A DNA stretch of 63,551 nt, filler included, from Intoshia linei (GCA_001642005.1; 4 parts of 4 records of this genome joined end to end with filler, not necessarily neighbours in it); one strand, 5' to 3'. Shown: positions 24,981 through 30,645, counted from the first letter of the whole stretch. Notes: generated by a model not told the origin, from the sequence alone. Numbers and translations: made by a program.

Positions 24981-27628
24981 ATGAAATATCTTTTGATAAT
25001 TATGGTCCTTTTTGTATGTGATCTGAATGCAAGTAAGTATTTAAATATATGTCATACTGTAATAAGTCAGACGGGCTAACTAGTGGTTCACATTTGTTCG
25101 TCAATTGTGAACAGATTATTACTTATGAAATATGTTACAAAGTTAATTTTATTATTTTCATACTATATTGTAATGGAAACATATAGGAATAGCGATAATA
25201 ATATAATTAAAAGTTTTAAAATGTCCAATCAATATTTAGTGAAACAAAATTGTCGTGATAACATTAAGCTGGGTTCATATTTTAGTAGGTTCATATAAAA
25301 AAAAATCGACTGTATATCACTTTATATAAGTAAGGACTGATATATTAATAAATATATAACATTTAATATCAAATATCAATTTAGATGGTAAATTTTATTA
25401 TACACGTATAAACGTGTATTATGTTATACAATGTATAATACACATCTATGTGTCATAAACATTTAATTAATACCATTTAACTATCTACTAAATTTATTCA
25501 ATACCGTGAGTGGTCAAAAGGGCCTACAGTAATGAGTAGTGTAATATTTTAATTTATTAATATGTACGGTTGGAAAATTTCTTAAATATGTCAAAATTTT
25601 GATGAGCAATGTTATTTTTAATTTTTAGACAATAAAAGATCGATTAATAATCATACGTATTTAGTGCATAAAGTTTCATTTATGATATGAGTTTTGTTCT
25701 AATGCATGAACTCGAAAAGTGAGTGACGTCCTGAGTTAAAAAAAAATTTTTAAAAACTTTTGCAAAATGCGCTATTTTGATAAAATACACACTATTTGTA
25801 TGGTATGTCCTAGATTCTTAGACCTGTGTTACACCAATATATATATACTAGGTTGACTGTTATGTACTACGTACAAACTGCACCTAGCTCTGACGAAAGC
25901 ACATTTTTATTATTTTTTTTTGCCGAATCATTTTATTTAAACAATAAATGTGAATTAATTAACAGTCCAAAAATTAAAAAAAAATATTATTCTAATAAAG
26001 CTTATTCCAGTTGATATTAATACATAATTAGAATGTATAATTTTAAATTAAGATACAACTAATTTACATTTTTCCAAGTCTTGAGGATCATTTGATAGAA
26101 TTTTATTTTCTAGTCTAGAAATATTAATTCCTGATACTAGTTAATCTCTTATTAAACAAGTGATATCATCATTTAATATTGTGTAAACCATTCACGTAGT
26201 TCAATTAAAAATTTCCACTTTTATTGATGAGAATGATTTCAATTTCAGTAAATTATTGATTCGATTTGACATTAAAGAAATTATTTTGTAATTTTTTAGA
26301 TTTTAAGATATTTAGAATATAAATCTTTTATTTATATTAAAATAAATTCTAGATATTAAATATATCAATAAAGTTTTTAATATGATAATATTTCAATTTA
26401 GCTTGTAGTAGTTTAAATGAAAAATATTGTGATGAAAATCCTTTTTGCAAATGGATCGATAAGGAATGTATTGAAAGTAATCCTAACTTATATAATAATT
26501 ATATATTATATCTAATATAATAATCTAATATGCTACGCGATTTTTGTGAGTGTGTTATGCTGTATTTAAATAAGTACCGGTATTAGAATTTTTTAAGTAC
26601 CTATAGTGTCGGTGTTAATTGTAATCACACTGGACTAAAAAAATACTACTTTTTAAGAGTTTTAATTTAAAAGGTCTAGAAATATTTATGAACTTATGTT
26701 ATTTATTGAACCTGTCTGGAAATATTGTATACATAATCCTAACATATATATTATACGACGCGATTTTTTTGTGTGTGGATGTGTGTTTTACTTTATTAAA
26801 ATAACTAGCACTCTTAGAATTTTTTAAAGACCAAATTTTAATTACGGTTTATTTGAGATGTATAATAAGATAAATTTCACATTTTACGGGTCAAAAACCC
26901 CAGTTGTTCCTCTTTTTAAAAATCAAACGAGTTGGAGAATTTAAAAAAATATAAAAAAAAGTTAACACTCTAGTCTAGACGTTTAATGCACATACAAATG
27001 GTACAGTGGTATATTGTTAACACACATTCAAAATTTCAATCCGAATAAGTGACAACTTTACGGTCAAAAAAAGATTTCAGTATTCATATATTTTTTTTCG
27101 AAATATTTTATTAAAACAAAAAATGTGAAATAATCAATGGTCCAAAAATTAAAAAAAAAATTTTTATGATAGAGCTTAATTTAGTTGATATAAATACATA
27201 ATTTTAAATTCAGAAATCTACGGATTTTTGGTTAAAAATAATTTTTAATATATTATCAACCAATATTTTTTAAATATTTCGATTAAAATGAAAAATTGAA
27301 AATGTAAATATTGATTTTACAATTTCAAAAAAAATGTGCATTGTACGTTTACACATTCCCAATAAAAACATAAGGGTAAAAATCTATTTAATTTATTTTT
27401 TTAGTATTTTTTTTATTGCTACGCAAATTATAAATTTCAAATTTTTATTTTCAAAAGATTTTTATTCAATTACTCTATTTTATTAATCTAGATAATAATT
27501 TATTGTTAATATGAATATAATGTATAAAATATATTCTTACTTATATAAACTAATGAAGCTAAAAATTTGTCTTTGTTTATCTAGATTCTGGATCAACCGT
27601 AATTAGTAGTTTTTTCAGTACATTCTCA
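24981..27628 (+). CDS. Predicted small secreted or GPI-anchored Cys-rich protein (unrecognised family)
   Basis: Exon 24981-25032 is MKYLLIIMVLFVCDLNA with a GTAAGT donor (phase 1). Exon 26402-26476 is (T)CSSLNEKYCDENPFCKWIDKECIE (phase 1-1). Candidate exon 27585-27628 is (N)SGSTVISSFFSTFS with a GTAAGT donor. A possible tail exon at 28353-28382 (VKFIIYSVV*) is speculative. Confidence 0.6.
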
Positions 27629-28439
27629 GTAAGTTAGTATTATACTATCTTCTATCTATGGGCTTTTTGACTCGTAAGATGTGAGTTTGTGAGGTTAAAA
27701 TTTATTTTTTTAACACTTTGAAAAACAACTAATTAAAATGTAAAATTTATAAAATTCTAAGACTGATAGTTATGTAAATAAACAAGAACACACACAAACA
27801 AATATAGCGTATAGTATTATATAAGTTTGGATTCAGAAATTTTAGGATTATTTCATATACATAAAAAAGGTTTTTTACGTTTTTAATTGTGAAGGATTAA
27901 GTTTCTGAAGATGAAATTTACGATGAAACATGACTCTCGAAGTGATTGATTAAATACAAACAAAAATACATTTTTAACTACAGTCTATTTTGTTCTATAT
28001 GAACAGGAAGGGACTAAGTTTTGATTATTTTCATAATATACAGTAATAGAAACATATAGTAATAGCGATAATAATATAATTAAAAGTTTTGAAATTTCCA
28101 ATCATTATTTGGTAAAACTAAATTGTCGTGATAACATTAAGCTGAATTCATATTTTAGTATGTTCATATAGAAAAGAATCGACAGTATATCACTTTATAT
28201 AAGTAAGGACTGATATATTAATAGATATATAACATTTAATATCAAATATCAATTTAGAAAGTAAATTTTATTATACACGTATAAACGTGTATTATGTTAT
28301 ACAATGTATAATACACATCTATGTGTCATAAACATTTAATTAATACCATTAGGTTAAATTTATTATTTACTCGGTAGTTTGAAATAATTTTTGATCTTTC
28401 AAAATTTTTATAATGGATAGAATGGATAATTTTAAATTA

Positions 28440-28670
28440 GGATACAACTAATTTACATTTTTCCAAGCCTTGATGTTCATTTGATAGAATTTTATTTTCT
28501 AGTCTAGGAATATTAATTCCTGATACTAGTTGATCTCTTATTAACCAAGTGATATCATCATTTAATATTGTGTAAACCATTCACGTGGTTCAATTAAAAA
28601 TTTCCACTTTTATCGATGAGAATGATTCCAATTTCGGTAAATTATTGATTTGATTTAACATTAAAAAAAT
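28440..28670 (-). pseudogene. LTR-retrotransposon gag-like relic in the duplicated intron segment (also ~26050-26275)
   Basis: Minus frame reads RDQLVSGINIPRLENKILSNEHQGLEKC, resembling the Gypsy gag 'IRDxLVxGI...KLL...LEK' pattern; interrupted by stops. Confidence 0.4.
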
Positions 28671-28790
28671 TATTTTGTAATTTTTTAGATTTTAAGATAT
28701 TTAGAATATAAATCTTTTATTTAAATTAAAATAAATTCTAGATATTAAATATATTAATAAAGTTTTCAATATGATAATATTTCAATTTAG

Positions 28791-28868
28791 AGTGTGAAGA
28801 ATTGAACAAAAAACTCTGTAAGGAAACTTTTTACAATTGCATATGGTTCAATAAACGTTGTATAACAA
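28791..28868 (+). CDS. Second, divergent Cys-rich cassette exon
   Basis: tttag|(K)CEELNKKLCKETFYNCIWFNKRCIT|gtaatc; 78 nt, phase 1-1, open frame, same Cys/Trp framework as 26402-26476. Confidence 0.6.
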
Positions 28869-30645
28869 GTAATCCTAACTTATATATTAATAATAATTAT
28901 ATATTATATTTAATAATATGCTACGCGATTTTGGTGAGTGTGTTATGCTGTATTTGAATAAGTACCGGTATTAGAATTTTTTAAATATCTATAGTGTCAG
29001 TGTTAATTGTAATCACACTGGACTAAAAAAATACTACTTTTTAAGAGAATTTTTATTTGAAATTCTTTAGGTGTGTTAACATGATACAACTCTACCACTG
29101 TATATTACATACTACAACTGTATCACCTGTAATTTTTTTGAAATTTTAAGGCTGTTTTCAAAAAAGGAAGGGTAATTTGAGGTTTTGGTCCTGAAGATTT
29201 CATTTTTTTAAATTTAAATTTATGATAATGTTTATAATTTTAAAATGCGCATCAGCGTATATATTTTTTTAAATTCTCCAACTCATTTAATTTTCAAAAA
29301 GAGAAACATATAACATATAGTATTATATAAGTTTGGATTCAGAAATTTTAGGATTATTTCATATACATAAAAAAGGTTTTTTACGTTTTTAATTGTGAAG
29401 GATTAAGTTTCTGAAGATGAAATTTACGATGAAACATGACTCTCAAAGTGATTGGTTAAATACAAACAAAAATACATTTTTAACTACAGTCAATTCTGTT
29501 CTATATGAACAGGAAGAAACTAGGTTTTGATCATTTTCATACTATACTGTAATGGTAACATATAGGAATAGCGATCATAATATAATTAAAATTTTCGAAA
29601 TGTCCAATCAATATTTGGTAAAACAAAATTGTCGTGATAACATTAAGCTGGGTTCATATTTTAGTATGTTTATATAGAAAAGTATCGACTGTATATCACT
29701 TTATATAAGTAAAGACTGATATATTAATAGATATATAACATTTAATATCAAATATCAATTTAGAAAGTAAATTTTATTATACACGTATAAACGTGTATTA
29801 TGTTATACAATGTATAATACACATCTATGTGTCATAAACATTTAATTAATATTATTTAATTATCTACTAAATGTGATCAGGACCGTGAGTGGTCAGAGGG
29901 GCCTACAGTAATGAGTGGTGTAATATTTTAATTTATTAATATGTACGATTGGAAAATTTCTTAAATATGTCAAAATATATTTTGATGAGCAATGTTATTT
30001 TTATTATAAAATTTGATAACGATAAAAAAACTTGTGTCGATATGTTCCATATATTAGTAAATCATTATGTATTAAAATCGCGTCTAGCGAAAAATATAAT
30101 TAAATATTATTAACAATTATTTATTGTCGTATACCAAAAGTACACTGAATGACTTTAAGATGAACGCATTAGTTTACTTTATTGTTTAATCAATCAATTC
30201 TTACATAATATTACATATCTTAATTCATACTTACATTTCTGGGGTTGAAATTTTGTATTTATATTAACTGGAATAAGCTCTATCAGAATAATTTTTTTTT
30301 AATTCAGACTGTTAATTATTTTAAATTTATTGTTTTTATAAAATGATTTAAAAAAAAATATATGGATACTAAAATGCTTTTTTGACTGTGAAGTCATCAC
30401 TTATTCGGATTGAAATTTTTTATGTGTGTTAACATGATACGACTCTACCACTGTACATTACATACTACAACTGTATTATTTGTAATTTTTTTAAAATTCT
30501 AGGGCTGTTTTCACAAAATAGGAAGGGTAATTTGGAGTTTTGGCCCTGAAGATGTGAAATTGGGAGGTTGACAATTAAGTTTTTATACATCCCAGAAAAA
30601 ACTGTAATAAAAATGTGGTCTTTACAAAAGTAACACACACAGCCA

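What the first reader, a model, noticed from the sequence alone, without database searches (positions are those of the whole stretch)
26030..29047. Duplicated Cys-rich exons are hypervariable while their flanking introns stay ~95% identical
Seen: segments ~26030-26660 and ~28420-29047 are duplicates. The ~370 nt upstream of each exon differ at about 18 positions by hand count, and the downstream flanks are also very similar. The embedded exons (26402-26476 CSSLNEKYCDE-NPFCKWIDKECIE; 28791-28868 CEELNKKLCKETFYNCIWFNKRCIT) differ at about 31 of 75 nt plus a one-codon indel, mostly non-synonymous. Frame, splice sites and all four Cys codons plus Trp are unchanged. Established: exons diverging faster than introns on a fixed Cys scaffold is the pattern of venom peptides such as conotoxins and of host-parasite interface proteins. 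Inference: strong diversifying selection or exon-restricted gene conversion in an undescribed disulfide micro-domain family.
Basis: partly seen in the sequence, partly recalled or inferred. Interest (0 to 1): 0.9.

Follow-up and report, generated by a model that had tools for sequence, protein, structure and literature searches.

The report
Two diverged Cys mini-exons, near-identical introns
Two neighbouring 75/78-base exons of a probable secreted cysteine-rich protein gene differ at 40% of bases while the intron sequence around them differs at about 4%. Silent sites are as diverged as the rest, so old exons sitting in recently homogenised introns fit better than a burst of positive selection.

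Summary
Units 26030-26660 and 28419-29047 differ at 18/372 bases upstream, 30/75 in the exon (plus one codon indel) and 6/174 downstream. The best-fitting hyperdivergent segment, 26402-26474, starts at the first exon base and ends two bases before the last.

Both segments read as coding exons:
- Only one frame is open in both, and both are intron phase 1 on each side.
- Four Cys and one Trp keep their spacing (C-x7-C-x5/6-C-x-W-x4-C).
- The only signal-peptide-like first exon in the piece (24981-25032, GTAAGT donor) also ends in phase 1.
- AlphaFold folds both as helix plus beta-hairpin. Their few weak PDB matches (Z 2.0-2.9) are mostly PSI domains of plexins, semaphorins, Met and RON.

Differences fall evenly on codon positions (10/9/10), pS is 0.57-0.71 against pN 0.36-0.42, and intron divergence is 0.044. 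The flanks look like neutral young DNA, as diverged as neighbouring repeats.

So the exons are far older than their flanks, or mutate far faster. The likeliest cause is concerted evolution or cassette exchange confined to non-coding DNA, as proposed for Hessian-fly salivary genes.

No RNA data, further genomic copies or protein homologues could be obtained. Expression, gene end and organism remain unknown.

The parts
24981..25032 (+). Putative first coding exon. It holds an ATG and a 17-residue signal-peptide-like sequence (hydrophobic core of 11, small residues at -3/-1), plus one base of the next codon. The donor is GTAAGT and the intron is phase 1.
   Evidence: Translation. A scan of both strands for ATG + hydrophobic run of 8 or more + donor found only this site. 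Signal-peptide status is judged by eye; no predictor was run.
26030..26401 (+). 3' end of intron 1, the upstream flank of cassette A. It is 95.2% identical to 28419-28790 and ends in a T-rich tract, a TTAAT branch-like site and AG.
   Evidence: nhmmer finds no other copy in the piece.
26402..26476 (+). Cassette exon A. It is 75 nt, phase 1 in and phase 1 out, and encodes a C-x7-C-x5-C-x-W-x4-C peptide.
   Evidence: Only this frame is open in both cassettes. AlphaFold model has mean pLDDT 83.
26477..26672 (+). 5' end of intron 2, the downstream flank of cassette A. The donor is GTAATC.
28419..28790 (+). 3' end of intron 2, the upstream flank of cassette B.
28791..28868 (+). Cassette exon B. It is 78 nt, phase 1 in and phase 1 out, and encodes a C-x7-C-x6-C-x-W-x4-C peptide.
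   Evidence: AlphaFold model has mean pLDDT 71 and the same helix plus hairpin topology.
28869..29062 (+). 5' end of intron 3, the downstream flank of cassette B. The donor is GTAATC. An F-family-like fragment lies at about 28892-28985.

Best explanation
The piece carries the start of a gene for a secreted, disulfide-rich protein. It has a signal-peptide exon followed by at least two tandem, homologous, phase-1/phase-1 mini-exons. Each mini-exon encodes a roughly 25-residue, four-Cys, PSI-like module.

The two exon sequences separated long ago and are diverged at all codon positions, with synonymous sites near saturation. The 370 nt before and the 190 nt after each exon share a much more recent common ancestor, at about 4% neutral divergence.

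The most likely cause is recombination that renews the non-coding part without carrying the exon along. This could be gene conversion or unequal crossing-over between the repeated units, stopped at the exon by its high mismatch density and/or by selection against making the two modules alike. It could also be exchange of whole cassettes between family members whose flanks are already alike.

Shown: the contrast, its exact borders, the neutral look of the flanks, and the saturated synonymous sites. Inferred: the exon status, secretion, and the recombination mechanism.
For: Contrast and borders:
- Flanks differ at 4.4% (24/546) and the exon at 40%. The change-point coincides with the splice sites.

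Age of the exons:
- pS 0.57-0.71, pN 0.36-0.42, and codon positions 10/9/10.
- The probability of 5 or more synonymous hits on 15 sites at the flank rate is 3e-4 or less.
- The transition:transversion ratio is 18:6 in the flanks, typical of young DNA, but 16:14 in the exon, typical of multiple hits.

The flanks are young rather than constrained:
- Their divergence equals that of neighbouring junk repeats: E copies 5.0-6.5%, the 672-bp tandem repeat 3.9%.
- The differences are spread evenly and hit both copies.

Coding status:
- A single shared open frame and symmetric phase 1.
- Cys/Trp scaffold: 0 of 20,000 shuffles reach the observed score.
- A phase-matched signal-peptide exon.
- Confident and concordant AlphaFold models.
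- PSI domains make up 7 of 10 and 10 of 13 PDB chains with Z of 2 or more.

Precedent:
- Hessian-fly SSSGP genes show the same pattern. Their authors invoke concerted homogenisation of non-coding parts together with selection on the mature peptide (PMC2955719).
- Iterated homogenised introns within one gene are known in spider silk genes (PMC9779670).
Against: - Only two copies and 24 codons are available, so every rate estimate is noisy.
- Some of the 'identical' residues could be chance re-matches after many replacements.
- Conversion tracts ending within 2 nt of both splice sites need an added assumption: heteroduplex rejection, or selection on the very first and last residues.
- Both flanks have the same divergence. 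A single recent duplication of the whole unit would also give this.
- No transcript evidence exists.
- The donors are weak (GTAATC).
- No other genomic copies could be examined.
Confidence: 0.5

Rival explanations
1. The whole unit duplicated recently, about 4% ago. The exon then changed some 13 times faster than the introns, under intense diversifying selection on a fixed Cys scaffold. Exon-targeted hypermutation of the kind once proposed for conotoxins may have helped.
For: - The divergence borders coincide with the exon borders, as selection on the peptide predicts.
- Both flanks and the nearby E repeats have similar ages, as one duplication event predicts.
- The Cys codons are identical, including the single TGC, while 4 of 6 other conserved residues changed codon. 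This recalls the codon-specific Cys conservation described for conopeptides (from memory).
- Bicycle and SSSGP effectors do evolve this fast.
Against: - Synonymous divergence is pS of about 0.6, against 0.044 in the flanks.
- Differences are equal at all three codon positions and dN/dS is below 1.
- Selection alone does not raise silent-site change.
- No exon-limited mutator is known in animals' germ lines.
- The Cys-codon contrast is not significant (0/4 against 4/6, p about 0.08).
Confidence: 0.2
2. The segments are not functional exons. They would be a two-copy repeat, possibly part of a mobile element or a decayed pseudogene, whose variable core mimics an exon by chance in AT-rich DNA.
For: - The piece is a mosaic of repeat families.
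- Part of the downstream flank derives from repeat family F (nhmmer E = 1e-5).
- The donors are weak and there is no transcript evidence.
- No significant homologue was found among 1.84 billion representative proteins, in the PDB sequence search or in the Atlas. Pfam gave only a sub-threshold match for exon B (DUF7043, 15.2 bits against a cut-off of 27).
- nhmmer with one exon does not find the other.
Against: - A neutral core would not keep one shared open frame, a 3-nt indel, and 15 of 15 Cys/Trp codon bases unchanged at 40% divergence.
- The protein score beats all 20,000 shuffles.
- AlphaFold gives pLDDT 83 and 71 with the same topology for both.
- A phase-matched signal-peptide exon with a consensus donor lies 1.4 kb upstream. 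It is the only such site on either strand.
Confidence: 0.12
3. The near-identical flanks are the two ends of an introner-like mobile intron that spread into an older, intron-poor repeat-coding gene. Young introns would then bracket old exons.
For: - The borders lie exactly at the splice sites.
- The flanks are as young as the local transposon copies.
- The downstream flank holds transposon-derived sequence.
Against: - Intron 1 has the shared 3' end but a different 5' end, and no copy of the downstream flank lies near 25033.
- The upstream flank matches no other repeat in the piece.
- Insertion at the same phase and the same module border twice would need strong target specificity.
- A tandem duplication of flank-exon-flank explains the layout more simply.
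Confidence: 0.05

Closest known systems
Hessian fly (Mayetiola destructor) SSSGP salivary effector genes, 'unusual conservation' (Chen et al. 2010, PMC2955719)
   Same: - These are secreted small proteins.
- The signal-peptide region, introns and UTRs are highly conserved between tandem paralogues, while the mature-peptide coding region is highly diverged.
- The authors explain this by diversification plus concerted homogenisation of non-coding parts.
   Different: - There the units are whole genes in tandem. Here they are two adjacent exons apparently inside one gene.
- There dN/dS above 1 was reported. Here dN/dS is below 1 with saturated silent sites.
- No sequence relationship was tested, and the organism here is unknown.
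Iterated, homogenised introns in spider silk genes (Argiope MaSp2, flagelliform; PMC9779670)
   Same: Within one gene, repeated exon-intron units have introns 94-99% alike. This is attributed to unequal crossing-over or conversion.
   Different: In the silk genes the exons are homogenised too, or vary only by slippage of simple motifs. Here the exons are the one part that escapes homogenisation, and they encode a Cys-scaffold module.
PSI (plexin-semaphorin-integrin) domain
   Same: - Predicted short helix plus beta-hairpin.
- A C-x-W motif on the first strand.
- PSI domains of plexin A2/A4/C1, Met, RON and Sema2b/4D/6A make up most of the few PDB chains with Z of 2 or more for both models.
- An extracellular module encoded by a phase 1-1 exon.
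   Different: - Only 4 Cys in about 25 residues, against 6-8 Cys in about 45-50.
- No Cys directly after the Trp.
- No Pfam PSI match even at E = 10.
- Z is only 2.0-2.9, which is within the range of common small arrangements.
Aphid bicycle effector genes (Korgaonkar et al., bioRxiv 10.1101/2020.10.28.359562; Stern and Han 2022, PMC9168663)
   Same: - An N-terminal signal peptide.
- Small internal exons nearly all of GFF phase 2, which is intron phase 1 as here.
- Long introns, extreme sequence divergence between paralogues, and internal tandem duplications in 'megacycle' genes.
   Different: - No C-Y-C motif here.
- Only two internal exons are seen, against 5-25.
- Intron phase 1 is usual for secreted-module exons in general (from memory).
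- Intron conservation is not a described feature of bicycle genes in the passages read.
Venom gene families with accelerated exons: conotoxins, snake PLA2, ichnovirus cys-motif genes
   Same: A fixed Cys scaffold with hypervariable inter-Cys residues. Introns or signal regions are more conserved than the mature-peptide exons. Silent-site rates are also raised in conopeptides.
   Different: Those comparisons are between genes or species and have expression and function data. Here there is one intragenic exon pair and no expression data.

Membership tests
PSI domain (Pfam PF01437) | Sequence match to the family profile at or near its threshold | tested here: not met
   hmmscan of both exon peptides against Pfam-A at E up to 10 gave no PSI hit. 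The only hit was DUF7043 for exon B, at E = 0.029 and 15.2 bits against a cut-off of 27.
PSI domain (Pfam PF01437) | Fold: small Cys-knotted helix plus beta-sheet with a buried Trp | tested here: inconclusive
   Models have pLDDT 83 and 71, with helix 11-16 and a hairpin. VIA-align against 48,161 chains found PSI domains in 7 of 10 and 10 of 13 chains with Z of 2 or more. Best Z was only 2.7-2.9, with rmsd 2.0-2.2 over 29-30 residues. Foldseek found nothing significant.
PSI domain (Pfam PF01437) | Six to eight conserved Cys including C-x-W-C (from memory) | tested here: not met
   Four Cys per cassette. The Trp is followed by I or F, not Cys.
SSSGP-type 'unusual conservation' effector genes | Non-coding parts far more alike than the mature-peptide coding part | tested here: met
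   4.4% against 40%.
SSSGP-type 'unusual conservation' effector genes | dN/dS above 1 in the mature region | tested here: not met
   pN 0.36-0.42 and pS 0.57-0.71. Saturation makes the test weak.
SSSGP-type 'unusual conservation' effector genes | Salivary-gland expression and secretion | not testable with these tools
bicycle genes | Paired C-Y-C motifs | tested here: not met
   Neither cassette peptide contains C-Y-C. Exon 1 has a single Cys.
bicycle genes | Five or more micro-exons, nearly all GFF phase 2, plus a signal peptide | tested here: inconclusive
   Both internal exons seen are of that phase, and a signal-like first exon is present. Only two internal exons lie in the 8.4-kb piece.
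Mutually exclusive exon cluster | Tandem homologous exons of the same phase and near-equal length | tested here: met
   75 and 78 nt, both phase 1-1, and homologous.
Mutually exclusive exon cluster | Transcripts carry one or the other exon, never both | not testable with these tools
   No RNA data. Both lengths are multiples of three, so joint inclusion keeps the frame.
Introner-like elements | Whole introns that are near-identical copies with shared 5' and 3' ends | tested here: not met
   Intron 1 shares only the 3' end, and its 5' end has no match to the downstream flank.

The most novel reading that the evidence does not exclude
The near-identical intron flanks could be more than a by-product. 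They may act as recombination handles that let PSI-like mini-exon cassettes be swapped, duplicated or lost between positions and paralogues. That would amount to a germ-line cassette-exchange system diversifying a secreted host-interaction protein in an extremely AT-rich arthropod-like genome. Alternatively, the same flanks could direct alternative or mutually exclusive use of the cassettes.
Probability: 0.1. Interest if true: 0.8.

Novelty: new variant of a known kind. Interest (0 to 1): 0.4.

Why it matters
If transcribed, this would be a compact case in which exon and intron histories are uncoupled inside a single gene, at single-base resolution.

It would let one ask whether 'hypervariable exon, conserved intron' patterns in effector and venom genes reflect fast exons or renewed introns. 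That question has stayed open since the snake-venom, conotoxin and gall-midge reports.

Here the silent sites already argue for renewed introns. A genome-wide set of such cassettes would make the test decisive.

It may also define a minimal four-Cys PSI-like module.

Tried and rejected
Expression and reads:
- The look-up of sequencing runs found only DNA holders and no RNA run.
No read evidence of any kind exists.
- Those places were kept out of every later search. I also chose not to send the homologous stretch of copy B (about 28876-28913).
- I do not take the contig for human. It is an AT-rich, repeat-rich, arthropod-like sequence, and the tool itself says its filter trips by chance.

Homologues of the cassette:
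- A profile of the two exons against 1.84 billion representative proteins gave one hit, P0001. It is a simple tandem repeat and is spurious.
- Pfam gave only a sub-threshold DUF7043 match for exon B, and no paper mentions that family.
- The PDB sequence search, the ESM Atlas and Foldseek against PDB gave nothing.

More genomic copies and the organism:
- A 28-nt flank pattern found nothing in metagenome or viral contigs.
- A minus-strand ORF inside the upstream flank, a repeat ORF and the hAT remnant gave no hits as protein queries.
- An exact-protein look-up found no record.
- The organism therefore stays unknown. The 23.4% GC matches the most AT-rich insect genomes reported (Lysiphlebus fabarum 23.8%, Aphidius ervi 25.8%; PMC7257214). 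This is only a lead.

Further cassettes in the piece:
- A six-frame motif scan and nhmmer with the flanks and exons found none.

Step left out:
The exons were handled one by one by reference.

Considered and set aside:
- Coding read-through past the donor into the flank. In copy B this gives a hydrophobic tail, but a 10-nt indel breaks it in copy A.
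Full report
**Setting.** The usable piece is 23721-32115, at 23.4% G+C. It is a mosaic of repeats:
- A decayed hAT/BED transposase remnant at its start.
- Family F at 24557-24861 and 26679-26993, 8.6% diverged, with inverted fragments.
- A short family at 24358-24524, 25896-26029 and 27057-27220, and inverted at 30231-30385.
- Element E at 25147-25620, 27802-28350 and 29308-30003, 5.0-6.5% diverged.
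- A 672-bp tandem repeat from 30651 to the end of the piece, 3.9% diverged between units and about 80% like E.

I aligned 26000-26700 with 28389-29090 and counted by script.
- Upstream flank 26030-26401: 18 of 372 positions differ.
- Exon 26402-26476: 30 of 75 differ, plus one codon indel.
- Downstream flank to 26660: 6 of 174 differ, plus two indels.
- Exon against flanks gives Fisher p = 1.5e-16.
- A two-rate change-point search places the hyperdivergent block at 26402-26474 (likelihood ratio 71). The borders therefore fall on the splice sites to within two bases.
- In all other paralogous pairs of the piece, the worst 75-nt window reaches 0.09-0.19. Here it reaches 0.43 and starts at 26402.

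**Are these exons?** There is no transcript evidence. I kept those places out of every later search. The case rests on sequence alone:
- On the plus strand only one frame is open in both segments, and no minus-strand frame is open in both.
- Both segments begin with two bases completing a codon and end with one base of the next. They are phase 1-1 symmetric, 75 and 78 nt long, and their length difference is one codon.
- The acceptors are identical: a T-rich tract, a TTAAT branch-like site, then AG. The donors are GTAATC, which is usable but weak.
- The peptides share C-x7-C-x5/6-C-x-W-x4-C. All 15 bases of the four Cys codons and the Trp codon are unchanged, while about half of the other bases differ.
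- The global BLOSUM62 score of 60 is reached by none of 20,000 shuffles. At the DNA level the pair scores 11, against a maximum of 8 for random 78-mers. nhmmer with one exon does not find the other.
- 1.4 kb upstream lies an ATG followed by a 17-residue peptide with an 11-residue hydrophobic core and small residues before the likely cleavage point. It ends after one extra base at a consensus GTAAGT donor (24981-25032).
- That site is the only such candidate on either strand, and its phase matches both cassettes. The junction codons read Thr (exon 1 + A), Lys (A + B) and Lys (exon 1 + B).
- I put the chance that these are, or recently were, coding exons of a secreted protein at about 0.8.

The end of the gene is not in the piece, or was not recognised. 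No third cassette exists in the piece.

**What the module looks like.** Each exon was folded with four and two flank-encoded residues at its ends, using only the two-sequence alignment. AlphaFold gave mean pLDDT 83.1 for A and 71.1 for B. Both have the same layout: a short helix, then a beta-hairpin whose first strand carries C-x-W and whose second carries the last Cys.
- Foldseek found nothing significant.
- The exhaustive VIA-align search of 48,161 chains returned only 10 chains (A) and 13 chains (B) with Z of 2 or more.
- Seven and ten of these are PSI domains: plexin A2, A4 and C1, Met, RON, and semaphorins 2b, 4D and 6A. They align over the first 30-35 residues of the domain.
- The remainder are two trypanosome VSG C-terminal domains and Cachd1.
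- Z is only 2.0-2.9, which is expected for 31-32 residues but is also within the range of common arrangements.
- Pfam gives no PSI match, and the cassettes have four Cys rather than six to eight.
- So the module is PSI-like in predicted shape, and membership is not established.
- No sequence homologue was found anywhere. With a 24-residue query that says little.

**What the divergence pattern means.** The counts do not bear that out.
- Differences fall on codon positions 1, 2 and 3 as 10, 9 and 10 of 24.
- Nei-Gojobori gives 5.8-7.3 synonymous differences on 10.3 synonymous sites (pS 0.57-0.71).
- It gives 22-27 non-synonymous differences on 62 sites (pN 0.36-0.42), whichever codon is gapped.
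- Of the six conserved residues other than Cys and Trp, four use different codons.
- At the flank rate of 0.044, about 0.5 synonymous differences are expected. Five or more on 15 sites has p of 3e-4 or less.

The flanks look like young neutral DNA rather than constrained DNA.
- Their divergence equals that of the junk repeats next to them.
- Their differences are evenly spread.
- Transitions outnumber transversions 18:6. In the exon the ratio is 16:14, as after multiple hits.
- Corrected distances are about 0.6 for the exon and 0.045 for the flanks, a ratio of about 13. For silent sites the ratio is 20 or more.

The exon sequences therefore either separated long before the flanks did, or mutate much faster at every site. 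The sample is small. Some identical residues may be chance re-matches, so I treat the p-values as indicative only.

**Mechanism.** I commit to old exons in renewed flanks, at confidence 0.5. Recombination between the repeated units keeps making the non-coding parts alike, while the exons stay distinct. This could be gene conversion, unequal crossing-over, or exchange of whole cassettes among family members whose flanks are already alike.
- The sharp borders can arise because heteroduplex extension is rejected where mismatch density jumps.
- They can also arise because any tract entering the exon changes a residue at once.
- Exchange of whole cassettes would leave its end-points invisible inside identical flanks.
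- An early phase of diversifying selection may have created the difference. This pair cannot show it.
- Chen et al. reached the same two-part explanation for tandem SSSGP genes of the Hessian fly (PMC2955719).
- Homogenised iterated introns inside one gene are documented in spider silk genes (PMC9779670).

**Rivals.**
- Recent duplication with accelerated exon change, by selection with or without an exon-limited mutator (0.2). It explains the borders and the equal age of both flanks, but not the silent sites.
- A non-functional repeat or pseudo-exon (0.12). The repeat-rich setting, weak donors and missing transcripts speak for it. The preserved frame and scaffold, the confident folds and the phase-matched signal exon speak against it.
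- An introner-like mobile intron (0.05). Intron 1 lacks the shared 5' end, which speaks against it.
- Whether the two cassettes are used together or exclusively is a separate, open question. Both lengths keep the frame.

**Detail on the flanks.** The downstream flank contains an old fragment of family F, starting about 24-45 nt after the donor (nhmmer E = 1e-5, about 75% identity). That insertion predates the common ancestor of the two flanks. The upstream flank has no other copy in the piece.

**Comparison and novelty.** The phenomenon, with coding parts more diverged than non-coding parts in secreted Cys-scaffold or effector genes, is known. Examples read here are the gall-midge SSSGPs. Examples from memory are snake PLA2, conopeptides and ichnovirus cys-motif genes.

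The gene architecture also recalls aphid bicycle genes: signal exon, small same-phase exons, long introns. The C-Y-C motif is absent, however.

What is particular here:
- The contrast sits between two adjacent exons of one apparent gene.
- Its borders are resolved to the base.
- The silent sites point to renewed introns rather than fast exons.
- The module is a minimal PSI-like unit.

I rate it a new variant of a known kind, with interest 0.4.

**Organism.** Unknown. The composition fits the most AT-rich insect genomes on record (PMC7257214), but nothing here tests that.

Noticed in passing
window 23721-24290 (+): A decayed hAT/BED-type transposase remnant. A BED-finger-like stretch and a '...TMDEWTS...' hAT core motif are spread over two frames with several stops, and the remnant is cut by the piece's edge.
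   Followed up: partly
window 30651-32115: A 672-bp tandem repeat of at least 2.2 units, 3.9% diverged, running off the end of the piece. Its inner part is about 80% like element E, whose three copies (25147-25620, 27802-28350, 29308-30003) sit in introns 1, 2 and 3 in the same orientation.
   Followed up: partly
window 27576-27619 (+): A 44-nt segment inside intron 2 with a strong acceptor (long pyrimidine tract + TAG) and a consensus GTAAGT donor. It is open when entered in phase 1 but leaves in phase 0. That would make exon B read into a stop after four codons. It may be a poison or alternative exon, or chance.
   Followed up: no
window 27745-27803 versus 26540-26596 and 28928-28986: An inverted F-family fragment in intron 2 is 75-77% complementary over 57-59 nt to the F-like part of both downstream flanks. 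Pairing with the copy after exon B would loop out exon B, which could allow skipping or back-splicing. This was not tested.
   Followed up: no
window 26404-26475 and 28793-28867: All four Cys codons are identical between the cassettes, including the one TGC among three TGT, while 4 of 6 other conserved residues changed codon. This recalls the position-specific Cys-codon conservation of conopeptides, but it is not significant here (p about 0.08).
   Followed up: partly
window 24841-24952 versus 27243-27354: The 110 nt ending 29 nt before the putative start codon have an inverted copy (81%) inside intron 2. The promoter-proximal region may therefore be repeat-derived.
   Followed up: no
window 28778-28954 (+): If the donor of exon B is not used, the frame stays open for 29 more codons into the flank and ends in a hydrophobic tail. 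In copy A a 10-nt indel closes this frame early. It is probably chance in AT-rich repeat DNA.
   Followed up: partly
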